From positions 372,001 to 436,000 of the IMG/VR virus record IMGVR_UViG_3300009545_000018: a stretch of DNA of 64,000 nucleotides; one strand, given 5' to 3'. Positions 5,094 to 61,054 of the stretch are shown one piece after another; the stretch's first letter is position 1, and each line of letters opens with the position of its first letter. The notes beneath the pieces were generated by a model. The model saw only the letters and a list, made by a program, of their open reading frames with translations. It did no database searches and was not told the DNA's origin. The translations under genes were made by a program, and so were the position numbers.

Positions 5094-5441
5094 TTGGAAG
5101 CAACAAAAGAAGAGCTAAGAAATTTTTCTGAATTATCAGATGATATTTATAAGGTTCTTGAAAAACATAATATTACTGGTAAGAATGTTAAAGAGTTTTT
5201 GTTTGAAGTTGCTAAATTTCTAGGAAAAGAGCCCAACTACCAAAGTGAAAGTGGTGCTCATTTTGCAATACCAATATATGTTAAGAGATTACGAGAACAT
5301 ATAGGGAATAAGCCAGGCACTATTATAGTGCTTCCATCAGCTTATGGAAGATCCATAACTGGATTGGCACATCATGTTAGCTATATAAATTTGCTTCCGT
5401 CAGAAATAGAGCGTGTACTTAAATTAAAGTCATTTATGTAA
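5094..5441 (+). CDS. Hypothetical protein with the shared C-terminal tail
   Basis: ends EIERVLKLKSFM. Confidence 0.65.
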   Translation: MEATKEELRNFSELSDDIYKVLEKHNITGKNVKEFLFEVAKFLGKEPNYQSESGAHFAIPIYVKRLREHIGNKPGTIIVLPSAYGRSITGLAHHVSYINLLPSEIERVLKLKSFM

Positions 5442-5452
5442 ATAGGAAAGAA

Positions 5453-6046
5453 ATGAAAGACGATTTGAATATTTCCTTATCAGGCGCCCCAAATACAAAG
5501 TATGAAAAGTTTTTTGAAAAGTTTTCAGAAATAAATACATTAGATGTTAATAGCTGGAATGTTACACATCTCTTAGGATATTTTTGCAAAAAGTATCAAG
5601 AGACATATAAAACTCCGTATAAATTTAAATTCAATAGTCCCTCTCCAACTAAGTGTTTTGAGGTTTTTCAAATGAAAAAACTTGCTAGTTTATTAACTAG
5701 TCAACCCAAATTACTTAGAGATTATATTGATTGGGTTTATGAAACTAAAGTAGTAAAAGCCAAGAAAAAATTAACTTCTATTTCTTTTATGACACATGAA
5801 GGTTTAATTTTAGAATATCGGGACTCAGTTTTAATGGCTGGTCAAAAGGGAGAAGCTTTAGATCGTTCCAAGAACTTGCCAGATAATTATAAAGCTATTT
5901 TTGCTAAAGCAGGCGTTACATTATCTACTTATGGTGAATTGGCATTCTTATCACAAATGACAGAACAGTCCAATGAAATAGTTAATGCATTTAATGAATT
6001 AGTTGGTGCCGGCTTTAACAAAGATATTTTAAGTAAAATTGTATGA
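5453..6046 (+). CDS. Hypothetical protein in the replication cluster
   Basis: 197-aa ORF with AGGAAAG RBS. Confidence 0.7.
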   Translation: MKDDLNISLSGAPNTKYEKFFEKFSEINTLDVNSWNVTHLLGYFCKKYQETYKTPYKFKFNSPSPTKCFEVFQMKKLASLLTSQPKLLRDYIDWVYETKVVKAKKKLTSISFMTHEGLILEYRDSVLMAGQKGEALDRSKNLPDNYKAIFAKAGVTLSTYGELAFLSQMTEQSNEIVNAFNELVGAGFNKDILSKIV

Positions 6047-6357
6047 AAATAATATCTTCTTCAGATTTTGAAAAAGAATTTGGAATTAAAGTTTCTGAAG
6101 CAAAATCTTTAAATATTTTTAAAGAAATAGTTGGCAATCATTTTGTTGCCGGGCATAATACTTTTGTTAAAAAGTCTTCATATGAAATAGAATTGCAGGA
6201 ATTATCTAGACAAATTAATTTACCAATTATCATTTATCATGATTTAAATAAAAAGCATGACAAATATTCATATTATTATATTTTAGGATTTACTTCAGAG
6301 GATCCTGTAAAAATTAAAAAAATAATTAAAGCTAGCAAATTAAAGGCGTTTTTATGA
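6043..6357 (+). CDS. Hypothetical protein with the shared C-terminal tail
   Basis: ends KKIIKASKLKAFL; ATGA overlaps. Confidence 0.7.
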   Translation: MKIISSSDFEKEFGIKVSEAKSLNIFKEIVGNHFVAGHNTFVKKSSYEIELQELSRQINLPIIIYHDLNKKHDKYSYYYILGFTSEDPVKIKKIIKASKLKAFL

Positions 6358-6674
6358 CACAATTATTTTCATCAGAAGAAATATTTTCTAATAAAAATGG
6401 TTTAAAAAATAATTTAAATCATTATAATAATATGGCTAACGACGCTCAATTAAGTTTTGAAATTGAAAATAATATTATATTAACTGGAGGTAGCCATATT
6501 TCTTTAAATAAAGAAGATGAGTGTAGATATCTTAGAAAAGTTTCTATGGGAATGTCATTTGTAATTTATGATAGAGATAACTCTAAAAACTTTATATTAA
6601 TTCGACTAGATCAAGTTCAGATTAACAATTTATATAAAATACTTAAATTAGAAAAGTTAAAGGCATTCTTATGA
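6354..6674 (+). CDS. Hypothetical protein with the shared C-terminal tail
   Basis: ends YKILKLEKLKAFL; ATGA overlaps. Confidence 0.7.
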   Translation: MTQLFSSEEIFSNKNGLKNNLNHYNNMANDAQLSFEIENNIILTGGSHISLNKEDECRYLRKVSMGMSFVIYDRDNSKNFILIRLDQVQINNLYKILKLEKLKAFL

Positions 6675-7084
6675 TTGAAGTTCCAACTGGATCTCAAGTA
6701 ACAATAAGTCTAAGTAATGGTCAACTGCTCACTGGAAAAGTAGAAAATTGGTCCTCCGAAAATATTTCATTACGAACTTCACCCGAAGCTGGTATAACGA
6801 TCATAACACATCCAGAACGCGATATTGTTTTTGTTTATTATAAAGAAAATATCGAAAAAAATATTCAGCCTGTTGAGAAAATTTTAGACCAATCTAATCA
6901 AGAGTTTGAAAAAGTACTTAATGAACCCTTTTCTGAAATAAAAACTAAAAAGTTAGCTGAACTTAGAATATTAAAATCTAAAGCAGAAAAAGAAATTGTT
7001 GCTAGTCAACTTAAGAGTCATACAATTTCAGATGTAAAGAAAGTGAATTATGGAATCCCAAATATCAAGAAGCCGGGCACTTAA
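6671..7084 (+). CDS. Hypothetical protein (beta-rich N-terminus, possibly Sm-like)
   Basis: GSQVTISLSNGQLLTGKV pattern; fold is a guess. Confidence 0.5.
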   Translation: MIEVPTGSQVTISLSNGQLLTGKVENWSSENISLRTSPEAGITIITHPERDIVFVYYKENIEKNIQPVEKILDQSNQEFEKVLNEPFSEIKTKKLAELRILKSKAEKEIVASQLKSHTISDVKKVNYGIPNIKKPGT

Positions 7085-7754
7085 TAATATTCCAAATCAA
7101 AAGATCCAAGATTACTTAGATAATATTAATAAATCTACTGATACAGATCAAGCTAAATCTCTTAAAGTAATAGTAGCCAATAGATACGCTGAAAGCAACA
7201 TTCCAATAGAATATTGGTCTTTAAAAATGGACAAAGACTTTTATGGAGATCCTAGGCTATTGGAAAAATATAATAATTATGTGTCTGATTTAAAATCAGC
7301 TTATATGAGCGGAACGTCGCTATGTTTTGCTGGCAACCATGGTTTAGGTAAAACTATGACTATGGCATGTATTTTAAAGAAGACTTGTCAGAAAGGTTAT
7401 ACGGCATTGTATACTACTCTTTCAGATGTGGTTGTAGCTTTGACTCAAAGTGATGATAAATATAATGCAAAAAAAGAATTATTAATGGTAGATTTTTTAG
7501 TTATTGACGAGTTTGATAATAGATTCATGCCTTCAGATAATGCTGCAGATTTATATGCAAGAACATTAGAAAGTGTTTTTAGAACCAGAAGCCAAAATAA
7601 ATTACCAACACTAATGGCAACAAATAGCCCTAATGTTGTTGAGAGTTTTAATGGTCCCCTAAAACAAAGTATTAGTTCTTTGATGAGTGGATATATTAAA
7701 ACATTTGCAGTCTTCGGCAATGATTTTAGAAAAAGAGTTGGAGATAGTAAATGA
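7050..7754 (+). CDS. DnaC/IstB-like AAA+ ATPase (helicase loader-like)
   Basis: GNHGLGKT Walker A, DFLVIDE Walker B, LMATN; directly upstream of dnaB. Confidence 0.82.
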   Translation: MESQISRSRALNNIPNQKIQDYLDNINKSTDTDQAKSLKVIVANRYAESNIPIEYWSLKMDKDFYGDPRLLEKYNNYVSDLKSAYMSGTSLCFAGNHGLGKTMTMACILKKTCQKGYTALYTTLSDVVVALTQSDDKYNAKKELLMVDFLVIDEFDNRFMPSDNAADLYARTLESVFRTRSQNKLPTLMATNSPNVVESFNGPLKQSISSLMSGYIKTFAVFGNDFRKRVGDSK

Positions 7755-9415: not shown

Positions 9416-9682
9416 TTGGTAATGTCTAATTATATGAAAAATATTATATATGGTTTAGTATATGATAAATTTGGAATTAGACATTATGTTGAAAATACTA
9501 TATTATATAATGTAAATGATAAAATTTATTATCAAGATGGTTCGCTTGTAAAAGAAAATCTTGTTACAGGATTGTTTGAGCCGCAAAATGGTGGTAAAGT
9601 TTGGTATATAGATGGTATCTTAACAGATGCCACAAGTCAAGAAGAATTTGAAAAGCTTTTAAAATTAAAAGCTTTCTGGTAA
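9416..9682 (+). CDS. Hypothetical protein with the shared C-terminal tail
   Basis: KVWYIDG...SQEEFEKLLKLKAFW; same ending as 36282..36569. Confidence 0.7.
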   Translation: MVMSNYMKNIIYGLVYDKFGIRHYVENTILYNVNDKIYYQDGSLVKENLVTGLFEPQNGGKVWYIDGILTDATSQEEFEKLLKLKAFW

Positions 9683-17983: not shown

Positions 17984-18235
17984 ATGACATTACATGCCAC
18001 TGAATATGAAAAACAAAAAATTAATAAAATGGTTACAGAAATAGCCAAAATGTCTTTGTCTGAATGGCAATCTTTTAAAAAACTTTTTAAATACAAAGGA
18101 TTGCGTGCAGTTGAAATACATATTAATACTAGTATTAAATATTCAAGTCATTATGTTGAATTTTTTTCTTATGATACAGTTGATAAATTTTGGGCAGATT
18201 TATACAAATTTAGGCATTTAAAAGCTTTCTTATAA
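17984..18235 (+). CDS. Hypothetical protein with the shared C-terminal tail
   Basis: ends LYKFRHLKAFL. Confidence 0.7.
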   Translation: MTLHATEYEKQKINKMVTEIAKMSLSEWQSFKKLFKYKGLRAVEIHINTSIKYSSHYVEFFSYDTVDKFWADLYKFRHLKAFL

Positions 18236-18245: not shown

Positions 18246-18413
18246 ATGAAAATAGAATTTGAGGATAAATCTTACATTGAATGTAAAAAATCTTCTGACG
18301 GGAAGATAATTATAATTATTTCAGCAAAAGATCATAATAATGCTCTAAAAAAAATTACAAATGCTGTTGAGATATCTATTGATGATTTTAAAAGACTAAT
18401 TGAAGATGTTTAA
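18246..18413 (+). CDS. Small hypothetical protein (55 aa)
   Basis: MKIEFEDKSYIECKKS...; AAGG RBS. Confidence 0.55.
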   Translation: MKIEFEDKSYIECKKSSDGKIIIIISAKDHNNALKKITNAVEISIDDFKRLIEDV

Positions 18414-18780
18414 CGTTGAAGAATTTAATGATTATATAAAAAAGAATTATAATAAAAATATTATATTTATATATAATGAACAAATACAAAATATAATAAA
18501 TAATAATACAGTTTGTAATTGTGAAAATATTGAAAAGTTGATAATTAATGTTATGAAAAATGAGTTTTTTGTAGAAAACTTAGTTAATATTCCGGATTAT
18601 AAACAGAGTTATGATGATTTTTTAAAAACTTTTACCCAATATAGTTATAATAGATTTAATTATTTTTATTGTACACTAGCATCAACAAATAGTAGAGTAG
18701 TTGTTATTTTTCCACTTAAATATAGATCAGAATTTCATAAAAGATTGTCTAAAATAAATAATTTGAAAGTATTTTTATAA
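18406..18780 (+). CDS. Hypothetical protein with the shared C-terminal tail
   Basis: ends RLSKINNLKVFL; probable ATG at 18406. Confidence 0.65.
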   Translation: MFNVEEFNDYIKKNYNKNIIFIYNEQIQNIINNNTVCNCENIEKLIINVMKNEFFVENLVNIPDYKQSYDDFLKTFTQYSYNRFNYFYCTLASTNSRVVVIFPLKYRSEFHKRLSKINNLKVFL

Positions 18781-23116: not shown

Positions 23117-23169
23117 AATAGTCTTTATAACCTATAATCGTTTTTATTAAATTATAATATTAACTAAAA

Positions 23170-23559: not shown

Positions 23560-23562
23560 GAT

Positions 23563-27234: not shown

Positions 27235-27306
27235 ATTTAGTACCTACACGTTATACTTTAGTATACTAAATTTTTAGTATATAATAATATTAGAGGTATA
27301 AAACTT

Positions 27307-45539: not shown

Positions 45540-45796
45540 AATACTTTATTTTTACAAGCTCTTTTCATCTCTTCTTCCGAAAAAAATCTTTGTCCATAAG
45601 CCCAAAATTGCACTTCATTAATTTTATCTAAACAAATAACTAATTCATATCCTGCATAAATGACATTGTCAAGCCTGCAGATTTGATATCCATCCTCATA
45701 TATATCTAATATATAAGCTTTCCAGTGTGGATAATAAGAGGAATGATCGGGATAAAAATAAGTACCTATTTTAATTAAATTAATTATTTCATTCAT
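45533..45796 (-). CDS. Hypothetical protein with the shared tail
   Basis: ends FSEEEMKRACKNKVFW. Confidence 0.65.
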   Translation of the reverse strand: MNEIINLIKIGTYFYPDHSSYYPHWKAYILDIYEDGYQICRLDNVIYAGYELVICLDKINEVQFWAYGQRFFSEEEMKRACKNKVFW

Positions 45797-46182
45797 AAAA
45801 ATGCTTTTAATTTAAATTTCTTATATTCAATTGAATTTAATAGTTCTTCATTAGATTCAACGAGCACCCTATTTCCATCAATATACCATAATTTATTATA
45901 TGGTTCTATTGTAAATTCCACTGCCGGACCATTCTCATTATGCAGCTTTGTGTCTCTATACCACTCAACGTAATGTGCATATTTTACACAATAATTTCTA
46001 ATTATTTTTTCTTTATAGGGAGGATGATATCTCATCTGACGGCTCCCACAACCTAAACAAATATAATGAAAATTATCATATAGGCAAATACATTTATATT
46101 GTATTTTACAACTATGACATTCAATTATCTTAGGAAAATAATATTCAATTAAATAGGCTTCTTTATTTAAATCTACACTCAT
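45793..46182 (-). CDS. Zn-finger plus HRxDGPA-type protein with the shared tail
   Basis: CHSC...CLGC, LHNENGPAVEF, LWYIDG; ends YKKFKLKAFL. Confidence 0.7.
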   Translation of the reverse strand: MSVDLNKEAYLIEYYFPKIIECHSCKIQYKCICLYDNFHYICLGCGSRQMRYHPPYKEKIIRNYCVKYAHYVEWYRDTKLHNENGPAVEFTIEPYNKLWYIDGNRVLVESNEELLNSIEYKKFKLKAFL

Positions 46183-48460: not shown

Positions 48461-48461
48461 T

Positions 48462-49034: not shown

Positions 49035-49310
49035 TTACCAAAATGCTTTTAATTCCAAAGGTTTAAACATATTTTGTACAATTATTTGAAAATCATTCAA
49101 AGAATTAACATCTATTAAATATCCTTTATAATAGAATTTAATTTCATCATCTAATTCAATTGCAGGACCATTTATTCTATGTTTTTTGCCTTTTACCCAA
49201 TATTCTTTTCCACCATCTTTATATTCTACTGCTGGACCATCTAAACGATGTAATAAGTCATTCTCATAATAATAATCTCCATATTCATCTGTAACTATTC
49301 CATTTTTCAT
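49035..49310 (-). CDS. HRxDGPA-repeat protein with the shared tail
   Basis: HRLDGPAVE, HRINGPAIE; ends KPLELKAFW. Confidence 0.72.
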   Translation of the reverse strand: MKNGIVTDEYGDYYYENDLLHRLDGPAVEYKDGGKEYWVKGKKHRINGPAIELDDEIKFYYKGYLIDVNSLNDFQIIVQNMFKPLELKAFW

Positions 49311-50984: not shown

Positions 50985-51632
50985 ATGAATTCAAAGAAAC
51001 TTCTAAGATTTGCTATAGCATTCTATTCAATAGCAATGAAAGAAAAACTACCAGAAAATTCTAAAGATACTTCTAAAATACTTAAAAACTTAGAGGCATT
51101 AGAATCATTTAATGCTCGCAAAAGATATGCCAACGCCAATTTAAAAAATTTATCTTCCGGCTCATCCAGGATTGTGTACTTGACACCTGATAAAACTATC
51201 CTTAAGTTAGCAAAAAATGAAAAAGGATTGGCTCAAAATGAAGCAGAGTCTAATCCTAAAATGAAATCTAAGTATATTAATAAAGTACTTAAACGAGCTA
51301 AAAATGATGCTTGGATAGAGGTTCCATATTTAGATAAGATTACTGAAAGAGATTTTAAAAAGATGACAACATTATCTTTTAATGATTTTAGTAATTGTAT
51401 TAGGTATGGTTTAAAATCAGTATCAGGAAATACTGATAAAGATAAACCTGACTGTTTTGATAAGGTGTCCAAACATCCTTTGTATGTAGAAATGTTAGAA
51501 ATAGGTAAAAAATTTAAATTAATGCCCGGTGATTTATCCAAAATATCATCTTGGGGATCTAAAGATAATAAACCTATTCTTATAGATGCTGGATTGACAC
51601 AAAAAGTATATGAAGAATTTTATGAATCATGA
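50985..51632 (+). CDS. Protein-kinase-like fold protein
   Basis: SSGSSRIVY loop, ILKLAK, AQNEAE, GDL...SWG, LIDAG in kinase order. Confidence 0.55.
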   Translation: MNSKKLLRFAIAFYSIAMKEKLPENSKDTSKILKNLEALESFNARKRYANANLKNLSSGSSRIVYLTPDKTILKLAKNEKGLAQNEAESNPKMKSKYINKVLKRAKNDAWIEVPYLDKITERDFKKMTTLSFNDFSNCIRYGLKSVSGNTDKDKPDCFDKVSKHPLYVEMLEIGKKFKLMPGDLSKISSWGSKDNKPILIDAGLTQKVYEEFYES

Positions 51633-52177
51633 TATTTAATAAAATCTTGGATGGATTATATTATTACGGAACATGTATTTTATGTGATGGTAATATGTCT
51701 ATAAATAATGATGGATTTAATTACCAACCAGCTTATAATAATTGTGGTTTCAATTTAGTATTTAATCTTGACAAGATGGATAGACTTGTTGTAGATCCAA
51801 TTTCAGAGTCTGTATATATAAATTATGAACCGGAAGAGTTACTTTTTTATAATAATGATGTTGATGATTTTAAAAATATATATGGATATAATGATTGTTT
51901 TACAACTATAATAAAATGTAAGAATTGTGATAAGTTTGCGTACTCTATAGATATTCATATTGATTTATATGATCAAAAAATATTACATAGTAATTTAAAT
52001 GATATTACTTGTAATTATAAAGAAAAATATTGGATAATGAATAATTATTATCAAAATACAACAACATTATTAAATGATGTTAATGATGAATTGATTAAAG
52101 TGCCATTAATTACACTAGAAAAACAAAATATTAATTATATTTTTAATCGTTTACAAAAATTAATTATTTTCTCCTAA
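51629..52177 (+). CDS. Array member: CxxC protein with the shared tail
   Basis: CILC, CKNC; ends FNRLQKLIIFS. Confidence 0.7.
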   Translation: MIFNKILDGLYYYGTCILCDGNMSINNDGFNYQPAYNNCGFNLVFNLDKMDRLVVDPISESVYINYEPEELLFYNNDVDDFKNIYGYNDCFTTIIKCKNCDKFAYSIDIHIDLYDQKILHSNLNDITCNYKEKYWIMNNYYQNTTTLLNDVNDELIKVPLITLEKQNINYIFNRLQKLIIFS

Positions 52178-52193: not shown

Positions 52194-52868
52194 ATGTTAT
52201 CTTCAAATTTTTTAGAGCATGGTAAAACGTGCCCAATTTGTAATAAAAAATTGTCTTTATATGCAATAGTAGGTGAAATAGGAACTTTTAAATGCAATAA
52301 CAATTATGTTGCAAATAAAAAAAGAAAACTTAATTTTTATCCATTAAGAGATAAAATGTTTTTATTACACTCAAGTGTGAATAAAACTGACAATTTTGTA
52401 ATTAAATTAATGGATGATAATAAATTTGATTTTACTTTCTCTTCTGAGAATTTATTTAAAACTATAATTAAATCTAATATAAGTTTTTTTTATATTTGTA
52501 ATCTATCTTCATTTTATAATGAAACAAGCTATTCTATTAATAGCTATAATGTTGACGGGTTTAATGCATGTTATTATAAATTATCCAGTATTCTTTCTTT
52601 TAATTATAAAGACGATAATTTAACCCTAACAAATTATAATTCAAGTTCATGTCATTTAGAAATGTTCTCTCTATTAGAAGATAATAATAAATATTCTTTG
52701 ATTTATAATTATGGAACTCAAAAAACTCTATTTTATTTTAATGACTCTAAAGAAAACAATATAGAACCATCCTTCTTTAAAGAATTTGATATTTTAGAAT
52801 ATTATCCTGATTTTACTAATCATTCTAAAGTTTTGAATAAATTTAAATCTTGGGTTCTATTATCATAA
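52194..52868 (+). CDS. Array member: CxxC protein, variant tail
   Basis: CPIC; ends VLNKFKSWVLLS. Confidence 0.7.
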   Translation: MLSSNFLEHGKTCPICNKKLSLYAIVGEIGTFKCNNNYVANKKRKLNFYPLRDKMFLLHSSVNKTDNFVIKLMDDNKFDFTFSSENLFKTIIKSNISFFYICNLSSFYNETSYSINSYNVDGFNACYYKLSSILSFNYKDDNLTLTNYNSSSCHLEMFSLLEDNNKYSLIYNYGTQKTLFYFNDSKENNIEPSFFKEFDILEYYPDFTNHSKVLNKFKSWVLLS

Positions 52869-53363
52869 ATGATTACTATTAATGATTTTATAAATAGCCG
52901 AAATCATTGTTTCTGTTGTGGTTCAAATTTAGAAATCTGTATAGAAAGTTTTTCTTTACAAAAAACACCTTCTTTATTATTAAAAAACAATATATTATTA
53001 ATTAATTCATCTTACTTTGATATACATATAGATTTATTAAATAATTATGTAATAAAAGGTTGCGATAAATCACATTGGGAATTTAAACTGGTATTATTTT
53101 GTCCTTTACATAAAGAGTTGCCAAAAGATATATATAAGTATGAACTTATTTTTGATATTTATTGTGGAAAAATAGCCAATGAAACGCCTATAGAATACCT
53201 AATGACTGATAATTTTATTTTACAGTCATTTCCATCTCTAGATGAGATGGAATATGTTAGTTTAAAATCCAACAAAAAAATTACATTTCCTTACTTTGAT
53301 TATAGTCAGATGTCACTACCAAAGTTAAAGAGTAAACTAAAGACATATTTGTTAATGCAATGA
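52869..53363 (+). CDS. Array member: CxxC protein, variant tail
   Basis: CFCCGS; ends LKSKLKTYLLMQ. Confidence 0.7.
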   Translation: MITINDFINSRNHCFCCGSNLEICIESFSLQKTPSLLLKNNILLINSSYFDIHIDLLNNYVIKGCDKSHWEFKLVLFCPLHKELPKDIYKYELIFDIYCGKIANETPIEYLMTDNFILQSFPSLDEMEYVSLKSNKKITFPYFDYSQMSLPKLKSKLKTYLLMQ

Positions 53364-54440: not shown

Positions 54441-55013
54441 ATGAATAAGCTTTTATTAAAAGATTTTATAAAATATAATAGTCCTTGTTTTGTCTGCAAT
54501 AGTAATATTGAATTAATTGTTAATAATTATGATAATTTAACTCAACATAACTCTAGACTACATTGTCATGTTTCATCTAAACAAACTGTTATACCAATTA
54601 AAATTAAGTATAGTAATTCTCTAGAGTTAATCATTCATCATAAAGATAATAGATTTAGCACTAACAATATAGATGAGTTACTAAAGTATTTTCAAACAAA
54701 CATTTTGTGGTTAACTAGCCAATGTTCAAATTTAAAATGTAATTCTGTTATTGTATCCTCTCAAATTGTATTAAATACTAAATTTTTTAGACTTGATCCT
54801 CTAACCATACAATATGAACATTTTTACTTAAAAAATTCTAATAAAATATCAGCTATAGTAATGACTGATTATAGAAATAATAGTACAGTCATATCTTTAG
54901 CTGATGAATTTAATATTATTCTTAATCTATCACTAACCGCAATGAGTTTGAAAAAATATAAAACTAAAGAACAATTCTTTAAAAAAATGAAAACGTATAT
55001 TACATTTTCATAA
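54441..55013 (+). CDS. Array member: CxxC protein with the shared tail
   Basis: FIKYNSPCFVC (parallels FINSRNHCFCC in 52869); ends FKKMKTYITFS. Confidence 0.7.
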   Translation: MNKLLLKDFIKYNSPCFVCNSNIELIVNNYDNLTQHNSRLHCHVSSKQTVIPIKIKYSNSLELIIHHKDNRFSTNNIDELLKYFQTNILWLTSQCSNLKCNSVIVSSQIVLNTKFFRLDPLTIQYEHFYLKNSNKISAIVMTDYRNNSTVISLADEFNIILNLSLTAMSLKKYKTKEQFFKKMKTYITFS

Positions 55014-55466
55014 AAAAATCTTAAGATTATTAAGCCTTTTACAGTATAGAATGGTTTCTACTAAATCACGTATCTTTAATTGATGTTCATTGTTGTCTTT
55101 AATCCATTTTTGTTTTTTAAATCTGTAATCTGTTTTAATATTTATCTCTTTACCTAATTCAAATAATCTAATTTGAAAATGACTAAACTCTCTAAGTTTT
55201 TTAGGTTTACAATCGTAAGCGTCGTCAAGAACTAATTGTATATTATAATCGCCTACCTTAATAAAGTTATCAAAAATAATCCTTTTATTCTTATTGTAGT
55301 AGGTATATAATATAATGTTGTCTCTTAGAGATTCTTTTATTTTATTTTTAGTAACTTTATTACTAAAATCTAAAATTACGGTTGTTTGTCTAGTTGCTTT
55401 AATTAAACTCATAATGTATGTTTGTAATGCAGGTATATTAATATGTTTGATGTAAATGATCCACAT
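55008..55466 (-). CDS. Inverted unrelated gene inside the array, also with the shared tail
   Basis: No CxxC start; ends CKRLNNLKIFL. Confidence 0.65.
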   Translation of the reverse strand: MWIIYIKHINIPALQTYIMSLIKATRQTTVILDFSNKVTKNKIKESLRDNIILYTYYNKNKRIIFDNFIKVGDYNIQLVLDDAYDCKPKKLREFSHFQIRLFELGKEINIKTDYRFKKQKWIKDNNEHQLKIRDLVETILYCKRLNNLKIFL

Positions 55467-55763
55467 TGCTTAATTTGTAATAGACAATGTCGTGCTTTTA
55501 TAGAAAACTTTTACTCCTGTGATCTTATGCCAGCTCATTATTTTTCAATAATGATCAAAGATAATGTAATTAAACATATTCAAATTAGATTGGAAAATTT
55601 TTGCGCAACTTCCAATTATTCTTTGAATAAAACTTTTATTTGGAAGCATTGTGATAATAATTTAAATTGTTCCAAAATTATTATGTCTCCGGCAATGGAA
55701 TTTGATTTTAATAATTATATTAAGATGTTAAATAAATTGAAAACCATAATTAATTTTAGTTGA
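55443..55763 (+). CDS. Array member
   Basis: CLIC..C....H; ends LNKLKTIINFS. Confidence 0.7.
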   Translation: MFDVNDPHCLICNRQCRAFIENFYSCDLMPAHYFSIMIKDNVIKHIQIRLENFCATSNYSLNKTFIWKHCDNNLNCSKIIMSPAMEFDFNNYIKMLNKLKTIINFS

Positions 55764-56158
55764 TAATGTTACATATAAAAGTGATATTAAAACAAATGCC
55801 AATTAATTGTCCAATATGTAATGGACCCTTAGTCAATAACTTTAAAGAATATCCCAAAGGTAATACATATGCAATGGATAAAAATTGTTTTCAAGCCAGC
55901 CATTACTTTTATTGTGCTTCTACAAAAGGTAAGGAAGATGAAGTTGCTTTTATTTGTATCGGACTTGATCCATATAAAAAAGTAACGGCAAATTGGTTAG
56001 TCTTAGAAAAGAAATTATATATTTATGGTAATGAGTCTACCAATAATCGAAAAAATATCTCAGAAGTAAAAACGACATATATTCCATATGTTGAACCAGA
56101 TTTTTCGGATCCTTTTAAATTAATTGACAAAATAAGATTATATTGTAAATTAATATAA
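55760..56158 (+). CDS. Array member, variant tail
   Basis: NCPIC...C...SH; ends IDKIRLYCKLI. Confidence 0.7.
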   Translation: MIMLHIKVILKQMPINCPICNGPLVNNFKEYPKGNTYAMDKNCFQASHYFYCASTKGKEDEVAFICIGLDPYKKVTANWLVLEKKLYIYGNESTNNRKNISEVKTTYIPYVEPDFSDPFKLIDKIRLYCKLI

Positions 56159-56160
56159 TC

Positions 56161-56544
56161 GTGTTATATGTCCATCATATGGATGATACTTTGCTGTGTC
56201 CTATCTGTGGCAGCAAGATGAGAAACCTTATTATGAATGATAAGTTTTGTTATCAAATTGGTAAAGTTCTCTCTTACATAGAGAGATCTTGTCATAATAA
56301 AGTAAATCATTATGTTCAAATGATTGTAGACAAGAGTTCTAAAAAAGTTTTTTGTGTAAAACTTCCTTTGAATCCACAATATTCTAAAACAATAGAAATA
56401 AATTTCTATAAAAGTGAATGTATTTTAAATCTTCTTAAAGATAAAATAAGTTATACTTTAAATATTCCTAAAATAATTGTGCCTGACTTTCCAAATCTAA
56501 TTAAATTGAAACAACAAGTTAACTTATATTCTCTATTTTCATGA
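56161..56544 (+). CDS. Array member
   Basis: CPICGS...CH...NH; ends LKQQVNLYSLFS. Confidence 0.7.
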   Translation: MLYVHHMDDTLLCPICGSKMRNLIMNDKFCYQIGKVLSYIERSCHNKVNHYVQMIVDKSSKKVFCVKLPLNPQYSKTIEINFYKSECILNLLKDKISYTLNIPKIIVPDFPNLIKLKQQVNLYSLFS

Positions 56545-56561
56545 GGTGATATATATAAAGT

Positions 56562-56942
56562 ATGATAAATTGTCAAGTCTGCGGACAAAATCTAGTGAGA
56601 TCAGGCAATGCAGAAATATATACTTGTATGTCTTCTTTCCATTGGATTGAAACTTATAATAAATATATAGAATATAAACACTTTGCTTGTCATTTTAAAG
56701 ATAGTAAAATATTATATAAGGTTGTAACAATCTATCCATATTGTTTCAAAATGTTTTATGAAGATAATAAAACTAGAATATCTAAATCCATTGTCAGGTC
56801 TGAAATTAAGAAAAATGGTAAAGAGACCGCTTACTCTTCTGAAGAAGTTAATATTTTAGAAATTGATTCTATCATAGAATTTCCTTGGTCTAATAAAGAT
56901 CAAGTGCTTGATAAATTAAAATTATATTCTATCTTTTCATGA
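56562..56942 (+). CDS. Array member
   Basis: CQVCG...C; ends LDKLKLYSIFS. Confidence 0.7.
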   Translation: MINCQVCGQNLVRSGNAEIYTCMSSFHWIETYNKYIEYKHFACHFKDSKILYKVVTIYPYCFKMFYEDNKTRISKSIVRSEIKKNGKETAYSSEEVNILEIDSIIEFPWSNKDQVLDKLKLYSIFS

Positions 56943-57259
56943 ACTATCAATGTCATTATTGTAATAAAAATTTAGAAAGAACCTCAACTGTTACATTGTC
57001 TTGTATTGGAACAGGAAATTACATTATTAAATGTTTAAATTGTTTTAAAACTAAAATAAAATTTAAGGATTATAATATTTTTGATGTAATTCTAGTTGGT
57101 AATAATTATAGTTGTCTAAAATTTTCTAATAGTTTTGATAGTAATAAAAGTTGTATAGAGGTAAATTCTTCCGAACATTTATATTTAAATAAGTGTTTAT
57201 CTTATGAAGATTGTATATTAATCTTTAAAAAATTTAACAAAATATCTGCTTTCTTATGA
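56939..57259 (+). CDS. Array member
   Basis: CHYC...C...CLNC; ends KKFNKISAFL. Confidence 0.7.
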   Translation: MNYQCHYCNKNLERTSTVTLSCIGTGNYIIKCLNCFKTKIKFKDYNIFDVILVGNNYSCLKFSNSFDSNKSCIEVNSSEHLYLNKCLSYEDCILIFKKFNKISAFL

Positions 57260-57558
57260 TTTGTCCTATTTGTAACTATAATTTATCTAAAAGTGACCTT
57301 CATGAAGGCGTCTTTATTTGTCAACAAGAAAAGAAAGTAAAACATATTTTTATGTGTTATTTTTCTTTATCTGAACCAGATATTCTAGAAGATTATTATA
57401 TAGAAGTTTCTTCTCTTAATTTAAATATTGATGGTTACCCCACTGACAATGAAACTCATATAACTTTTAATAAGAATACAATAATTTTCTCATATATAGA
57501 TTATTGTGACGCCTTAGAACTCTTTAATAAAATAAAGAAAATGTATATATTTACTTAA
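57256..57558 (+). CDS. Array member
   Basis: MICPIC...C...KH; ends NKIKKMYIFT. Confidence 0.72.
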   Translation: MICPICNYNLSKSDLHEGVFICQQEKKVKHIFMCYFSLSEPDILEDYYIEVSSLNLNIDGYPTDNETHITFNKNTIIFSYIDYCDALELFNKIKKMYIFT

Positions 57559-57560
57559 TT

Positions 57561-57881
57561 ATGTTATGTCCCATCTGTAATAATCCATGTTCTCCTAAAT
57601 TAACTACTAAAAATAATATTATTGGTGTATCTTGTGAAATAATTACAATTAGTAATTATTATCATATATTTATTTATGCTTCTGAAGACAATTTTATGCT
57701 GGCAATATATTACACTACCCTTGAAGAAGAACAATTTATAATTGTTGGCTGTTACAATGATAGTAATTCTGTAAATTTTATTTTTTCTATAAAAAATAAA
57801 ACCTTTTTAATACCACAATTTAATCCCTGTTCTTCTTTAGAAGTAATAGATAAATATTTAAATATGAAGGCATTTATATAA
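57561..57881 (+). CDS. Array member
   Basis: MLCPIC; ends IDKYLNMKAFI. Confidence 0.72.
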   Translation: MLCPICNNPCSPKLTTKNNIIGVSCEIITISNYYHIFIYASEDNFMLAIYYTTLEEEQFIIVGCYNDSNSVNFIFSIKNKTFLIPQFNPCSSLEVIDKYLNMKAFI

Positions 57882-58150
57882 TGTGTCCTATTTGTTTTGA
57901 ACCTCATCCTTCTCATAAAGTTAGATTTAATCATAGGTTTGTTTATATAAATGACTTTCATTGGTCTCTTTCTATACATTATAAAAATACTACTATAGAA
58001 ATTAGCAGAGAATGTCCTAGTAATGGTTTTAATTATAATTATTATGTTTATTTACAGATCGGCTCAAACGAATACCAATTACCAGAATTTGAATTGTGTA
58101 ATACTTTAGAAGTATTAAATAAATTTATGAAAATTAAATCATTTGCATAA
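57881..58150 (+). CDS. Array member
   Basis: MCPIC; ends LNKFMKIKSFA. Confidence 0.7.
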   Translation: MCPICFEPHPSHKVRFNHRFVYINDFHWSLSIHYKNTTIEISRECPSNGFNYNYYVYLQIGSNEYQLPEFELCNTLEVLNKFMKIKSFA

Positions 58151-58209
58151 TTATTTTTAATTGCTTTATCGATTATCATGATTATAGTAGTGCTGATATA
58201 AAATTTTCA

Positions 58210-58488
58210 ATGCATTGTCCAATTTGTAATAAATTTATAACGCCTGACGCCGATGCCATCAGAGTATGTCGAGGTAATAATCCAGAGGGATTTCATCATT
58301 TTTATTTTGAAAACCCAACTAATTTTAGTTTATTTTTTGAAAATGTAGAACTCCATGCCCTTAATAATAAATATACTTTTATAGTCGAAGAGCCCCGCCA
58401 AATAATAAAAATTAATTTAGATAAAATTGAATATTGTGAAATTATGGAAATTATAGATAGATATATGAAAATGTTGGTTTTTTCATGA
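58210..58488 (+). CDS. Array member
   Basis: MHCPIC...C...HH; ends IDRYMKMLVFS. Confidence 0.72.
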   Translation: MHCPICNKFITPDADAIRVCRGNNPEGFHHFYFENPTNFSLFFENVELHALNNKYTFIVEEPRQIIKINLDKIEYCEIMEIIDRYMKMLVFS

Positions 58489-58766
58489 ATTGTCCCATTT
58501 GTCAGCTATCTATGACACTTATTAAAATAAATAATAAAGATGAAAGATTTCGCTGTGAATCAAATAAGCAACATTATTGTGTTTATTATTTAAATGGACT
58601 TACTTGGTGGGTGCAACATAATAACATGGAAATTGAATATGATCATCTATTTGGTTGTAGTTTAATTGTAAATGATGAATCAGGTATAGAACACTATTAC
58701 AGAATAGATTATAATGTGTCTTTTCAAGATGCACCAAAACTTTTAAAATTGAAAGCTTTTTTATGA
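58485..58766 (+). CDS. Array member
   Basis: MNCPIC...C...QH; ends APKLLKLKAFL. Confidence 0.72.
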   Translation: MNCPICQLSMTLIKINNKDERFRCESNKQHYCVYYLNGLTWWVQHNNMEIEYDHLFGCSLIVNDESGIEHYYRIDYNVSFQDAPKLLKLKAFL

Positions 58767-59071
58767 ATTGTCCAGTTTGTAATCAACCTATGATTTATGT
58801 AAAAGAAGATGAAGGTGGTCCGCAAACCTTTAATAGAAATAAATGTAACTATCGTCCTGACCATGATACTAGGCATTATGATGATGGTGCCTGGTTTACA
58901 AAATTAAATAATATTCAAATAGGACATAATCTAGATGATCCTAATCTTTCCAACTTCTATGTAAGAATAATTGGCGAACATGAAACCTCCTTTTTAAATA
59001 TTGATGCAATATCTTTTGAAGATAGTTATAATTATCTTATTAAATTTTCGAAATTGAAAGCCTTTCTATGA
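58763..59071 (+). CDS. Array member
   Basis: MNCPVC...C...DH; ends LIKFSKLKAFL. Confidence 0.72.
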   Translation: MNCPVCNQPMIYVKEDEGGPQTFNRNKCNYRPDHDTRHYDDGAWFTKLNNIQIGHNLDDPNLSNFYVRIIGEHETSFLNIDAISFEDSYNYLIKFSKLKAFL

Positions 59072-59352
59072 ATTGCCCCATCTGTAACCATCAAATGGAA
59101 GAAAGATATAAATATTTAGCTCCCACAGGAATTTTCTTTAGATGTATCCAATTCTCACAACAGCATGATACCGTTTTTATTAACGAAAAAGAATGGACCG
59201 TTAGATATAACAGTATCATTTTGTTTACAATAAATAGTTTGTTTTATTTAAAATTTTCCACCAATAGTCAAAGCATTAATATTCCCAATATTCCTTTTAA
59301 TGAATCTTTTAAATGTATACAAAAATATCTTAAATTACAAAGCTTTACATGA
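59068..59352 (+). CDS. Array member
   Basis: MNCPIC...C...QH; ends IQKYLKLQSFT. Confidence 0.72.
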   Translation: MNCPICNHQMEERYKYLAPTGIFFRCIQFSQQHDTVFINEKEWTVRYNSIILFTINSLFYLKFSTNSQSINIPNIPFNESFKCIQKYLKLQSFT

Positions 59353-59405
59353 TCTGCCCCTTTAATATTCTGCAACGTTATATTAATTTATCAGCTTTCT
59401 TATGA
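59349..59405 (+). CDS. 18-aa tail-only mini-ORF MICPFNILQRYINLSAFL
   Basis: Family start (MICP) fused in frame to the tail; ATGA overlaps on both sides. Confidence 0.6.
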   Translation: MICPFNILQRYINLSAFL

Positions 59406-59772
59406 TTATTCTTTATACTTTTCTCTTGTCTTTAATATTAGCAGCTTGGCTTACAGCTACCCCCAAATTACAGCTAATCCCAACTAAACATCTTCTTATA
59501 TGTCCATTTTGTCTAAAACAATTGGATAAGTATGCTGTTATGTTTAGAGACTGTAATAATTTCCCTCCCCTGGAAAAATTAATCATGCTTTCTCTATGTT
59601 TGCAGAAAATTTCTATCTGATTGTTTATGCTGATGTTACTATTAAATTAGAAAAATATTATAATTCATATTTTATCACAATCAATGATAAAATATTTACA
59701 ATCCCTCCCTTCCAAGTGTGTAATAGTTTAGAGGTAATGCATAAATATTTAAAATTATTGCCCTTTTCTTAA
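59402..59772 (+). pseudogene. Frameshifted array member
   Basis: ICPFC...C in one frame; from the C-rich run near 59561-59570 the -1 frame continues NHAF...MHKYLKLLPFS stop. Confidence 0.6.
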
Positions 59773-59816
59773 CAACATACAATATCTCGATCGCAACTTC
59801 CCTCGCGCATAAAATT

Positions 59817-60071
59817 ATGAAATGTCCCCTCTGTTATGATAGCTGTCAAACTCTCTATTCTAATGAATTTAGATGTACTAAGTTTGATCATAGTTTCGTT
59901 TTTTCTCATCATGATTGGGCTCTCTATCATATACCATCGGATATAATTACTACAACTTATGGGCTATCGTATTATACCAGTAATAATATTATCTCCTTTG
60001 AAACGCTAAAATCCCCTGATGCTGCTATTAAAATTTTGTTAAAATTCTTAAAAATATCCGCCTTTGCCTAA
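59817..60071 (+). CDS. Array member
   Basis: MKCPLC...C..FDH; ends LLKFLKISAFA. Confidence 0.72.
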   Translation: MKCPLCYDSCQTLYSNEFRCTKFDHSFVFSHHDWALYHIPSDIITTTYGLSYYTSNNIISFETLKSPDAAIKILLKFLKISAFA

Positions 60072-60072
60072 A

Positions 60073-60218
60073 ATGAATTGTCCCATTTGTCAAGCTAAAC
60101 TTATAAAATATCTAAGAATCCATTAGAAGAATTGTCTTGCTATAAAATGAAAATTATCCCGTTTTCAGAGTGTTATCAAACGTTACAACGCTATATCAAG
60201 ATGTCTGCCTTCCTATGA
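60073..60218 (+). pseudogene. Frameshifted and shortened array member
   Basis: MNCPICQAKLIK, then the -1 frame at an A-run gives ISKNPLEE...LQRYIKMSAFL stop; internal 23-aa ORF 60147-60218. Confidence 0.6.
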
Positions 60219-60514
60219 AAATTTGTCCCGTTTGTCATCAGCCACTAATAAAAGAAAAATTAGGTAGTCCCATATTTACTTCTTATTATTGTACCGAATT
60301 TGGTCATGTTGCTTCTTGGTCTTCTTCTAACAGTTGGTCATTATACTGCTATGTTAATGATTATTTATATGCTATTATCGGCTCGGAAGATAAATGTAGT
60401 TTTATCACCTTTACTGATAATACAACAAAAGTAACAACAACGAATATTTATACTTCTTTTGAAGAGTCTTATCTGTCTATCCAACGAATGGTTAAATTAT
60501 TAACTTTTATTTAA
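60215..60514 (+). CDS. Array member
   Basis: MKICPVC start via ATGA overlap; ends IQRMVKLLTFI. Confidence 0.72.
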   Translation: MKICPVCHQPLIKEKLGSPIFTSYYCTEFGHVASWSSSNSWSLYCYVNDYLYAIIGSEDKCSFITFTDNTTKVTTTNIYTSFEESYLSIQRMVKLLTFI

Positions 60515-60515
60515 A

Positions 60516-60821
60516 ATGAATTGCCCCCACTGTAATATAATGTGTTCTAAATCTGATCATACTTATGATTGTTTTAAAGATTTTAAACATACTTTTATCT
60601 TTTCTAACAAAAACTCTTGGTGGCTTATTATTAAATATGATAGTCTAATAGAATATCGTTTGGAAATTCATAATTCTCTTCCTACTTTTTATGTCTTTGC
60701 TAATCCTCCCTTTTCTATAGTCTTTGAATATGTAATACATGAACCCGTAATAGCAGCAAATGCTAAATCTATAATAGAAAAATATATTAATCATTATAAT
60801 AAAATGAAAGCCTTTATATGA
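60516..60821 (+). CDS. Array member
   Basis: MNCPHC...C...KH; ends HYNKMKAFI. Confidence 0.72.
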   Translation: MNCPHCNIMCSKSDHTYDCFKDFKHTFIFSNKNSWWLIIKYDSLIEYRLEIHNSLPTFYVFANPPFSIVFEYVIHEPVIAANAKSIIEKYINHYNKMKAFI

Positions 60822-61054
60822 AAGAATTACCTGTTAAAAATGATAGTTATTTCTATAATGATAATAATTGGTCTGTTTATTATGTTTTCTGTAATAAATA
60901 TAAGGTAAGAATTTGCTGCATCTTAGAAAAATGTTATGTCCATATGTTGAATGAACAATACGTAACGGTAAAATGTATGCCAATTAATTCTTTAAAGTTT
61001 GATGATGCAGATTCTTTTGTTAATAGATATTTTAATTTAATGGCTTTTTATTAA
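60818..61054 (+). CDS. Last array member (N-terminal CxxC missing)
   Basis: ends VNRYFNLMAFY. Confidence 0.65.
   Translation: MKELPVKNDSYFYNDNNWSVYYVFCNKYKVRICCILEKCYVHMLNEQYVTVKCMPINSLKFDDADSFVNRYFNLMAFY

What the first reader, a model, noticed from the sequence alone, without database searches (positions are those of the whole stretch)
5094..61054. One C-terminal peptide tail (helix + K-[LMI]-x-x-F-x-stop) on about 35 unrelated small proteins: candidate phage-wide addressing tag
Seen: 32 ORF-track proteins plus 3 mini-ORFs end with Phe at -2 after a basic amphipathic helix (KLKAFL, KLKAFW, KLLAFT, KMKAFI, KLYSIFS...); three more carry variant tails. The tail is fused to at least three unrelated bodies: CxxC Zn-finger-like proteins, HRxDGPA-repeat proteins and singletons (5094, 6043, 6354, 17984, 18406, 37047, 55008). 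It occurs on both strands across 56 kb. It is conserved as protein, not DNA: KLKAFL is encoded with all four Ala codons (GCG in the 6043 ORF, GCA in 6354, GCT in 58485, GCC in 58763). None of the recognisable enzymes or fibres has it. Known precedents for short terminal addressing motifs: T4 internal-protein capsid-targeting sequences, C-terminal clamp-binding motifs of T4 gp33/gp55/gp43, and ClpX C-terminal degrons such as MuA RRKKAI. Inference: a modular cargo-plus-tag system that docks a variable payload library on one shared receptor, for virion loading/ejection, compartment import, a hub protein, or protease targeting/saturation.
Basis: partly seen in the sequence, partly recalled or inferred. 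Interest (0 to 1): 0.92.

Follow-up and report, generated by a model that had tools for sequence, protein, structure and literature searches.

The report
One shared tail on phage proteins
A 448-kb uncultured bacteriophage ends about a third of its small proteins, which have unrelated bodies, with the same roughly 12-residue C-terminal peptide (K..KLKAF + one residue + stop); the motif is real, virus-specific, widespread and apparently undescribed, and it looks like a docking handle whose partner is still unknown.

Summary
In the phage part of the window (1-61100), 36 of 98 ORFs of at least 50 aa have Phe at -2, against 4.5 expected. In 79 other viral loci the strict motif occurs in 0.8% of ORFs, against about 30% here. 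Selection acts on the protein, because synonymous codons vary freely. The consensus is phi(-11) x [KR](-9) phi x K(-6) L K A F(-2) x-COOH. It sits on a Zn-ribbon/beta-meander family (about 27 copies), on HRxDGPA hairpin-repeat proteins and on ORFan bodies, and profile comparison aligns only the last 13-18 residues between these groups.

The same tail occurs in dozens of uncultured phage contigs (37-480 kb, GC 26-49%). There it is found on about 70 BLAST-unrelated bodies and once as an extension on a dNMP kinase. None of 120 sampled pattern hits in cellular genomes was a tail gene. Tail genes are accessory and patchy among close relatives.

AlphaFold places the helix confidently on the body, with the last 2-3 residues free. 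On a helical wheel K-9, K-6, A-3 and F-2 form one stripe opposite the packing face.

Best reading (about 0.45): a rigid C-terminal docking motif that ties a diversifying library of small binding domains to one conserved, probably host, partner. No partner was found, so the "addressing tag" reading is only partly supported.

The parts
5094..5441 (+). 115-aa ORFan with tail ...KLKSFM, just after the UvsW-like helicase
   Evidence: Its only match among 5.8e9 proteins is itself.
6043..6357 (+). 104-aa protein, tail KLKAFL (Ala codon GCG)
   Evidence: Positional counterparts with the tail occur in L088 and L095 and are absent in L110 and L160.
6354..6674 (+). 106-aa protein, tail KLKAFL (Ala codon GCA). 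It overlaps the previous gene by ATGA.
9416..9682 (+). 88-aa hairpin-repeat-like protein ending EEFEKLLKLKAFW, in the slot downstream of DnaB
   Evidence: Relatives have a 115-125-aa tail gene with a different body in the same slot.
17984..18235 (+). 83-aa singleton, tail HLKAFL, directly after the MetAP gene
   Evidence: L149 also has two tail genes between MetAP and the AAA_28 gene.
18400..18780 (+). 126-aa singleton, tail NLKVFL
35965..36288 (-). 107-aa HRxDGPA-repeat protein, tail KLLSFI
36282..36569 (-). 95-aa hairpin-repeat protein ending SSQEEFEKLLKLKAFW. This was the query for the homologue search and for the second structure model.
37047..37376 (-). 109-aa singleton, tail KLLIFM, between the DHFR and ThyA genes
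42165..42497 (-). Zn-ribbon (CxxC) family member, tail KLLVFT. The likely true start is MNCPYC at 42452.
   Evidence: P0025
42449..42751 (-). Zn-ribbon family member, tail KLLAFT
45533..45796 (-). 87-aa protein with the divergent tail KNKVFW. Its last 24 residues align with the hairpin-repeat family tail.
45793..46182 (-). 129-aa hybrid with CxxC pairs, an HNENGPA hairpin and the tail KLKAFL
49035..49310 (-). 91-aa HRxDGPA-repeat protein, tail P-L-ELKAFW, with a Pro inside the tail helix region
51629..52177 (+). 182-aa long member of the CxxC family, tail KLIIFS. It is the first gene of the tandem array.
52194..53363 (+). Two CxxC paralogues (52194-52868 and 52869-53363) that keep the terminal helix length but have lost Phe at -2
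54441..55013 (+). 190-aa CxxC member, tail KTYITFS, just after the phage RF2 gene
55008..55466 (-). 152-aa non-CxxC protein, tail NLKIFL, on the opposite strand inside the array. Similar C-terminal regions occur in L309, L329 and L150.
55443..59352 (+). Thirteen consecutive CxxC-head/beta-meander genes of 89-132 aa. Twelve end with F at -2; 55760-56158 ends CKLI. Many are joined by ATGA overlaps.
   Evidence: The structure model of 58763-59071 has pLDDT 91.
59349..59772 (+). Decayed copies: an 18-aa head-plus-tail mini-ORF (59349-59405), and a gene split into a head piece (59402-59620) and a tail piece (59596-59772) in different frames
   Evidence: The pieces were examined separately and not joined.
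59817..60071 (+). 84-aa CxxC member, tail KISAFA
60073..60218 (+). Another decayed copy: a 17-aa head fragment (60073-60126) and a 28-aa tail mini-ORF (60132-60218, KMSAFL)
60170..61054 (+). The last three array genes: 60170-60514, 60516-60821 and 60818-61054. The last has no CxxC head.
3234..3473 (+). Doubtful case: a 79-aa helical protein ending LEIFS. I do not count it as a member.
   Evidence: No tail alignment to any family profile.

Best explanation
The tail is a short, rigidly displayed C-terminal docking motif.

What was shown:
- Each protein is a small, fast-diverging body. The bodies are a Zn-ribbon plus beta-meander, HRxDGPA hairpin repeats, ORFan folds and, in one relative, a dNMP kinase.
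- Every body ends in a helix of about 12-15 residues followed by 2-3 non-helical residues.

What I infer:
- One face of the helix (-11, -8, -4, -1) packs on the protein's own body and differs between families. For example, -1 is Trp in the hairpin-repeat family and Leu or Ser in the Zn-ribbon family.
- The opposite face carries the universal residues K/R(-9), K(-6), A(-3) and F(-2), and it ends at the free carboxylate.
- This stripe plus the chain end is read by one common, highly conserved partner.
- That partner is more likely a host hub, such as an AAA+ protease or unfoldase or another conserved machine, than a phage protein.
- The bodies would then act as a library of binding or inhibitor modules that are all brought to, or act at, the same place.

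The genes behave like accessory host-interaction genes. They sit in variable slots between core replication and nucleotide-metabolism genes, and in a birth-and-death tandem array.
For: - The motif is strongly non-random and acts at the protein level.
- Positions outside my search pattern are also shared by all classes: K/R at -9 in 65-92% and an aliphatic residue at -11.
- Similarity between family profiles is confined to the last 13-18 columns.
- The Zn-ribbon family has 122 cluster representatives among 1.84e9 proteins, and 118 of them have F exactly at -2.
- Hairpin-repeat homologues from ENA, JGI, Logan and NCBI keep ...QEEFEKLLKLKAFW almost unchanged while their bodies vary.
- Among hairpin-repeat bodies picked by their body motif, 65 of 67 tails stop exactly one residue after the F or L. 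Only two carry one extra residue. This points to selection on the chain end.
- The tail appears as an extension on a dNMP kinase. The Pfam DNMK profile ends at residue 181 of 213, and 96 cultured-phage kinases align no further than residue 198.
- On a helical wheel K-9, K-6, A-3 and F-2 lie 108-168 degrees away from the hydrophobic moment.
- AlphaFold models put the last 2-3 residues outside the helix.
- The same motif occurs in phages of 37-480 kb with GC of 26-49%.
- None of 120 sampled pattern hits in bacterial and archaeal genomes was a tail gene.
- Tail genes are missing from several relatives that share 63-69% DnaB identity and the same synteny.
- Body pI values range from 4.3 to 9.6, which means the surfaces are diverse.
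Against: - No partner was identified, and none can be with these tools.
- The helix is modelled with high confidence as part of each domain (pLDDT about 90), so part of its conservation is structural.
- An N-cap Ser/Thr, acidic residues in the first turn and basic residues in the last turn are also what any stable helix would show.
- Tail subtypes track body families, so the tail is mostly inherited with the body rather than shuffled.
- I had no atomic coordinates, so exposure of F(-2) is inferred from a helical wheel.
- Most outside loci were found through the motif itself, which biases positions -6 to -1.
- The host is unknown.
Confidence: 0.45

Rival explanations
1. Purely structural element. 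The tail is a stabilising last helix that covers a small beta-sheet or otherwise caps the domain, and it has no external partner. On this view the similarity between families reflects general rules for a stable terminal helix, possibly plus old 3'-end exchange between genes.
For: - The helix has high model confidence and follows the last strand directly with no linker.
- The best remote fold resemblance is a sheet-plus-C-terminal-helix domain, the polo box, at probability 0.66.
- Paralogues that lost the Phe keep the helix length.
- Tail subtypes follow body families.
Against: - Different bodies should not need the same L-K-A-F-x end.
- Conserved lysines lie on the face predicted to be exposed.
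- A dNMP kinase fold that is complete in 96 homologues gains the tail as an extra.
- The distance to the stop codon is strictly kept.
- Control phage ORFs show no such ends.
Confidence: 0.2
2. Degron or timer. The tail marks the tagged proteins themselves for a host or phage protease of the ClpXP or Lon type. This would give rapid turnover of early proteins, or it would flood the protease with substrate.
For: - The motif is C-terminal and needs the free chain end.
- It is a basic stretch followed by hydrophobic residues. From memory of ClpX C-terminal signal classes and of the SulA end recognised by Lon, this resembles known degrons.
- It sits on small accessory proteins of early-type regions.
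Against: - The tail is part of a well-packed helix rather than a floppy end.
- A metabolic enzyme carries it.
- There is no match to the ssrA-type LAA ending.
- Nothing here tests stability.
Confidence: 0.1
3. Mutual association. The tails bind each other, so tagged proteins form mixed oligomers, and the motif is frozen because dozens of partners must stay compatible.
For: - There are many copies per genome: at least 36 in the window and at least 20 more elsewhere on the contig.
- The sequence is helical with a heptad-like hydrophobic spacing.
Against: - Some mid-size phage contigs show only one or two tail genes in the fetched stretch.
- The mean hydrophobic moment is ordinary, 0.30-0.35.
- A helix of 12-15 residues is short for a coiled coil.
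Confidence: 0.08
4. Virion loading signal. The tail docks small cargo proteins inside the procapsid so that they are ejected into the host, as terminal peptides do for T4 internal proteins and encapsulin cargo.
For: - One terminal peptide sits on many unrelated small proteins, and the phage has a large capsid.
- Precedents exist in the HK97-fold world (from memory).
Against: - The identical peptide occurs in phages with very different genome sizes.
- Tail genes lie in replication and nucleotide-metabolism regions, not the structural region, and are dispensable in close relatives.
- Body pI is not uniformly basic.
- There is no linker and no protease-site pattern.
- A dNMP kinase is an odd cargo.
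Confidence: 0.07
5. Membrane anchor. The tail is an amphipathic C-terminal membrane-targeting helix of the MinD or FtsA kind.
For: - The motif is C-terminal, has a net charge of +1 to +2 and ends in Phe or Trp.
- The lipid-binding discrimination factor falls in the 'possible' zone for 43-80% of tails.
Against: - The hydrophobic moment (0.30-0.35) equals that of non-tail C-termini in the same phage (0.31).
- Lipid-binding helices are conserved in character, not residue by residue.
- The fixed single residue after the Phe is not explained.
- The model packs the hydrophobic face on the body.
Confidence: 0.05
6. Nascent-chain effect at termination. The last residues act inside the ribosome at the stop codon, for example to pause termination or to couple translation of the next overlapping gene.
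For: - The motif is always directly before the stop codon.
- Many genes are joined by ATGA overlaps.
- The phage encodes its own RF2 inside the array.
Against: - Stop-codon use is the same as in other genes.
- Tails also occur before intergenic gaps and on the last genes of runs.
- The helical, two-faced pattern is typical of folded protein.
- No known arrest-peptide signature is present.
Confidence: 0.02

Closest known systems
Capsid-targeting sequence of T4-type internal proteins (from memory: a short shared peptide on polymorphic small proteins of T4-like phages)
   Same: One short terminal peptide is shared by many unrelated, fast-evolving small phage proteins in variable loci.
   Different: The T4 signal is N-terminal and is cut off by the prohead protease. 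This motif is C-terminal, helical and needs the free end. No cleavage pattern is seen, the genes lie outside structural regions, and the motif occurs across very different phages.
Encapsulin cargo-loading peptides and microcompartment encapsulation peptides (from memory)
   Same: A terminal peptide or short amphipathic helix sits on unrelated cargo enzymes and docks them to one shell protein.
   Different: Those peptides hang on flexible linkers, and the cargo genes sit beside shell genes. Here the helix follows the last strand directly, and no shell-like partner is in sight.
C-terminal clamp-binding tails (bacterial beta-clamp motif; T4 gp43, gp33 and gp55 tails; from memory)
   Same: They are short hydrophobic motifs, often at the extreme C-terminus, on diverse proteins that share one hub. 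Here the tail genes sit among replication genes and one is a dNMP kinase.
   Different: The bacterial consensus (Gln first, Leu at position 4) is not matched, because this motif has K or N and Ala at those positions. No clamp or polymerase gene is available to test.
ClpX and Lon C-terminal recognition signals and the ClpX-binding tail of the adaptor SspB (from memory)
   Same: They are basic-plus-hydrophobic peptides that work only at the free C-terminus. The SspB tail tethers a variable substrate-binding body to a protease.
   Different: There is no sequence match to the ssrA-type ending. Those tails are unstructured, whereas this one is a packed helix. No stability or binding data exist.
Poxvirus ankyrin-PRANC and other viral F-box adaptor families (from memory)
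   Same: The logic is the same: large, rapidly diversifying paralogue families consisting of a variable binding domain plus a constant C-terminal motif that plugs into a host hub.
   Different: Those are eukaryotic viruses and work through the ubiquitin system. There is no homology, and no such family is known in phages.
Lineage-specific expansion of about 35 zinc ribbons in Bacillus phage G (PMC7824862)
   Same: A jumbo phage with a tandem expansion of small Zn-ribbon proteins of unknown role.
   Different: The paper mentions no shared C-terminal motif. Two of my queries found nothing in GenBank phages, so homology is not shown.

Membership tests
Bacterial beta-clamp-binding motif (QL[SD]LF / QLxLxL, from memory) | Gln at position 1 and Leu at position 4 of the penta- or hexapeptide | tested here: not met
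   The aligned positions are K/N/R (60-94%) and Ala/Ser/Val in all three classes. Only the Leu at position 2 and the Phe at position 5 agree.
T4-type clamp-binding C-terminal tails | Presence on the polymerase or on late-transcription factors, together with a gp45-like clamp in the genome | not testable with these tools
   No polymerase or clamp gene lies in the window. The rest of the 448-kb contig could not be read.
ssrA-like ClpX degron | Terminal small aliphatic residues (LAA-type end) | tested here: not met
   The tails end A-F-[W/L/S/T/I].
MuA-like ClpX signal / SspB-type ClpX-binding tail | A basic run followed by hydrophobic residues at the free C-terminus, on an unstructured end | tested here: inconclusive
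   The basic-plus-hydrophobic character and the strict terminal position are met. The segment is modelled as a packed helix, not a floppy end.
T4 internal-protein capsid-targeting sequence | An N-terminal peptide removed by the prohead protease | tested here: not met
   The motif is at the C-terminus, and the N-termini are Zn-ribbon heads or are unrelated to one another.
Encapsulin / microcompartment targeting peptides | A terminal peptide on unrelated cargo | tested here: met
   143 distinct tail proteins fall into 72 BLAST components, and one dNMP kinase carries the tail.
Encapsulin / microcompartment targeting peptides | A flexible linker before the peptide and a shell gene nearby | tested here: not met
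   The helix starts 3-5 residues after the last strand and has pLDDT of about 90. No shell-like gene appears among the annotated neighbours.
MinD/FtsA-type membrane-targeting helix | A strongly amphipathic helix conserved in character rather than in sequence | tested here: not met
   Mean hydrophobic moment is 0.30-0.35, against 0.31 for non-tail C-termini. Conservation is residue-specific.
MORN / MORN-variant repeat family (bodies of class B) | A match to the Pfam MORN models or to solved MORN folds | tested here: not met
   There is no Pfam hit at E of 0.1 or better, no PDB sequence hit and no fold hit. Only the recurring HRxDGPA hairpin motif resembles the 'MORN variant' repeat, and that resemblance is from memory.
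Any curated protein family (Pfam, PHROGs, PADLOC) for the tail-bearing proteins | A significant profile match | tested here: not met
   Nothing above noise was found for 37 window proteins or for 34 proteins from other contigs. The sole exception is the dNMP kinase.

The most novel reading that the evidence does not exclude
The tagged proteins are a phage-encoded library of adaptors. Each small variable body would seize a different host protein, such as a defence or housekeeping factor. The constant C-terminal hook would plug the complex into a conserved host AAA+ protease or unfoldase, or into a comparable hub, so that the phage redirects host machinery against host proteins. This would be a bacterial-virus counterpart of the ankyrin-PRANC and F-box adaptor families of eukaryotic viruses.
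Probability: 0.12. Interest if true: 0.95.

Novelty: new variant of a known kind. Interest (0 to 1): 0.78.

Why it matters
Phage small proteins are mostly of unknown function. A single portable peptide shared by dozens of unrelated ones would give a handle on all of them at once.

Finding the partner of one synthetic 16-residue peptide could place 50 or more proteins per genome in a single pathway. That count comes from at least 36 tail genes in the window and at least 20 more in six other stretches of the same contig. It could also reveal a hub that many uncultured phages target.

The motif is a simple search key for a whole class of accessory genes in metagenomes. If it proves transplantable, it could also serve as a compact targeting tag. 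No curated family or paper that I could find describes it.

Tried and rejected
- Chance or low-GC composition. Rejected by shuffles and by 79 control loci.
- A DNA-level signal. Rejected because codon choice at the tail broadly follows the genome's synonymous usage.
- An alternative genetic code. Freeing any one stop codon does not merge genes meaningfully.
- A giant eukaryotic virus. Many RNR relatives are giant-virus bins, but the window encodes DnaB, PhoH, a sigma-70 factor, bacterial RF2, IF-1 and a TubZ/PhuZ-like tubulin, so it is a phage.
- Cultured relatives. A 26-residue tail query and a Zn-ribbon member found nothing in GenBank phages. The PA5oct-type hits are internal repeats without the tail.
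- Host proteins with the tail.
- Homologue searches for 5094 and for the tail region of 6354 returned only themselves.
- The Zn-ribbon alignment was too divergent for a locus scan.
- The papain-like peptidase as a candidate partner found only self hits in IMG/VR.
- Fold searches against PDB and BFVD, and profile searches against PDB, gave nothing significant except two uncharacterised uncultured-phage proteins.
- A first KLKAFL pattern had too few fixed bases. The TTA-codon version worked.
- Literature searches for the motif strings and for related concepts found no description.

Full report
What the window is. The window has 30.5% GC and comes from IMG/VR contig IMGVR_UViG_3300009545_000018, which is 447,763 bp long. 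The window corresponds to roughly positions 372,001-436,000 of that contig. It is a tailed bacteriophage of jumbo size. It encodes a TubZ/PhuZ-like tubulin, a UvsW-like helicase, a helicase loader and DnaB. It also encodes a sigma-70-type factor, both RNR subunits, PhoH, type I MetAP, DHFR, dUTPase, IF-1 and a full-length RF2. Collagen-like fibre proteins are present too. Thymidylate synthase, IMPDH and a SET-domain protein are assigned by synteny with L002. The standard code fits. No close relative exists among GenBank phages; the nearest RNRs, at about 53% identity, are from Flavobacteriia phages.

Check of the observation. Mechanical ORF calling gives 98 ORFs of at least 50 aa before position 61100, and 36 of them have Phe at -2. 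Phe makes up 4.6% of residues, so the binomial p is 3e-23. The feature is confined to proteins of 230 aa or fewer (36/75, against 0/23 for larger ones) and is rare in shadow ORFs (10/124). A 10-residue stop-anchored pattern gives 41 six-frame hits, against a mean of 6.65 and a maximum of 15 in shuffles. In 79 other viral loci, many equally AT-rich, the strict motif is found in 0.8% of ORFs.

Anatomy of the motif. The position counts give phi(-12/-11), [KR](-9), phi(-8), K(-6), L(-5), K/L(-4), A(-3), F(-2) and a variable last residue. Three groups of bodies carry the motif:
- Group A has about 27 proteins with an N-terminal C-x2-C...C...H zinc ribbon. Two are at 42.2-42.8 kb, and the rest form a tandem array at 51.6-61.05 kb. 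The array includes three paralogues that lost the Phe and several decayed or split copies.
- Group B has six HRxDGPA hairpin-repeat proteins.
- Group C has seven proteins with no detectable relatives inside the window. Two of them were searched against 5.8e9 proteins and matched only themselves.
No Pfam, PHROGs or PADLOC family matches any of them.

Are the bodies one fold? With the tail removed, BLAST links only members within groups A and B. Profile-profile comparison between families aligns only the last 13-18 columns, at the very C-terminus of both partners. AlphaFold models of one group A member (pLDDT 91) and one group B member (pLDDT 75-93 over the C-terminal 35 residues) both show beta hairpins followed by a terminal helix whose last 2-3 residues are not helical. 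A shared sheet-plus-helix architecture therefore cannot be excluded for these two groups. Neither model has a significant solved or annotated structural relative.

The clearest evidence against an 'always part of the fold' reading comes from a related contig. L098:2002-2643 is a dNMP kinase. The Pfam profile ends at residue 181 of 213, and the remaining residues end ...SADEFRRILKLKSFL. The dNMP kinases of 96 cultured phages align no further than residue 198.

Distribution. Homologues of the 36282 protein from four public sources keep ...SSQEEFEKLLKLKAFW nearly invariant while the repeats in front of it vary. A degenerate DNA pattern for KLKAFW-stop found 84 stretches in IMG/VR, and a KLKAFL-stop pattern found 95. 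About half of the former, and 26 ORFs among the latter, are real gene ends. Together with the window they give 143 distinct tail proteins in 72 BLAST components. A profile of group A found 122 cluster representatives among 1.84e9 proteins. Nearly all align end to end, and 118 have F at -2.

Carriers include contigs of 340-480 kb that are syntenic with window positions 3.5-19 kb. They also include mid-size tailed-phage contigs of 37-40 kb that have a large terminase and a primase-helicase but no cultured relatives. One lineage uses KLKALW instead. Six other stretches of the same contig hold at least 20 more tail genes of further body types.

Evolutionary behaviour. When relatives are chosen by DnaB similarity rather than by the motif, tail genes are patchy. 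They are present in some contigs with 62-72% DnaB identity and absent from six others with 63-69% identity and the same gene order. In those six, the slots after DnaB and before the helicase loader simply lack the gene. Where a slot is filled, the body can differ. The window has an 88-aa hairpin-like protein where relatives have a 115-125-aa protein, yet the tail is the same. The array shows birth-and-death dynamics. This is how accessory host-interaction genes behave, not core assembly or replication genes.

Mechanistic inference. On a helical wheel the family-specific hydrophobic residues (-11, -8, -4, -1) cluster on one face. The universal residues K/R(-9), K(-6), A(-3) and F(-2) lie on the opposite face. 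The last residue, which is on the packing face, is Trp in group B and Leu or Ser in group A. Among hairpin-repeat proteins chosen by body motif, 65 of 67 tails end exactly one residue after the F or L, although a stop-codon shift would be an easy mutation. I infer a two-faced helix in which one side holds the tail to its own body and the other side, together with the chain end, is read from outside.

The partner is unknown. Because the motif is nearly identical in very different phages and the genes are dispensable, I favour a conserved host hub over a capsid or other phage-specific receptor. Compartment import is unlikely, because DnaB, the helicases and RNR lack the tail. The membrane-anchor idea is weak: the hydrophobic moment is no higher than in ordinary C-termini. 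Charge is heterogeneous, with body pI from 4.3 to 9.6.

Comparison with known systems and novelty. The logic resembles several known systems: terminal targeting peptides (T4 internal proteins, encapsulin and microcompartment cargo), hub-docking tails (clamp binders, the SspB tail) and viral adaptor families (ankyrin-PRANC). These comparisons rest on my memory of those systems. The features I could test do not make the tail a member of any of them (see the membership table). The literature library returned nothing on the motif. The nearest published item is an expansion of about 35 zinc ribbons in Bacillus phage G (PMC7824862). I therefore rate the finding as a new variant of a known kind, namely a shared terminal docking peptide. 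There is a modest chance that it is something categorically new, a phage adaptor library.

Limits. ORF starts are approximate. Most outside loci were found through the motif itself. No coordinates, complex models, host identity or expression data were available. Split genes were analysed as separate pieces and not joined.

Noticed in passing
window 61607-63918 (+): Nine same-strand copies of CCCATCnnnTAACGG (two of them with one mismatch; 0.03 expected by chance) are spaced 167-534 nt apart. They lie in the stretch just past the array, where GC rises to 0.41 and only short ORFs occur. No tRNA or Rfam match was found. This could be a promoter- or operator-like element or a repeated non-coding unit.
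   Followed up: partly
window 53360-54439 (+): A full-length release factor 2 (prfB model, 398 bits against a cut-off of 370; PCRF and RF-1 domains) sits inside the tail-gene array. The phage also encodes IF-1 (42754-42978, minus strand) and type I methionine aminopeptidase (17171-17980). TAG is a rare stop codon, used in 3 of 98 ORFs.
   Followed up: partly
window 1868-3226 (+): A tubulin/FtsZ-family protein with a TubZ-like C-terminal domain, which also hits the PhuZ PHROG.
   Followed up: no
window 40193-41014 (+): A papain-family (Peptidase_C1) cysteine protease, which is unusual for a phage. IMG/VR holds only this copy and a near-identical 48.6-kb contig.
   Followed up: partly
window 46895-48556 (-) and 42975-43598 (-): The first is a 553-aa protein that matches the dNMP-phosphatase PHROG at both ends and a LAGLIDADG domain in the middle, so it probably carries an intein or homing-endonuclease insert. 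The second is a free-standing GIY-YIG plus NUMOD3 endonuclease. The IMPDH of relative L002 carries an intein that the window copy lacks.
   Followed up: no
window 59349-59772 and 60073-60218 (+): Decayed Zn-ribbon paralogues: an 18-aa head-plus-tail remnant, a gene split into head and tail pieces in two frames, and a 17-aa head fragment followed by a 28-aa tail ORF.
   Followed up: yes
L098:2002-2643: A dNMP kinase in a 92.7-kb related contig carries the tail as a C-terminal extension. It is the only recognisable enzyme found with the tail.
   Followed up: yes
L122, L132, L140: A separate phage lineage has tandem hairpin-repeat genes that end ...VVKLKALW, with Leu in place of the Phe at the same distance from the stop codon.
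   Followed up: partly
window 19629-30339: Large fibre-like proteins with collagen triple-helix repeats and DUF5907 repeats lie on both strands, and GC is locally raised to 0.35-0.38.
   Followed up: no
L144, L345, L384 (IMGVR_UViG_3300025914_000017, 48.6 kb): A contig from another sample encodes proteins identical to several window proteins, including tail genes. The same phage, or a very close one, was therefore sampled twice.
   Followed up: no
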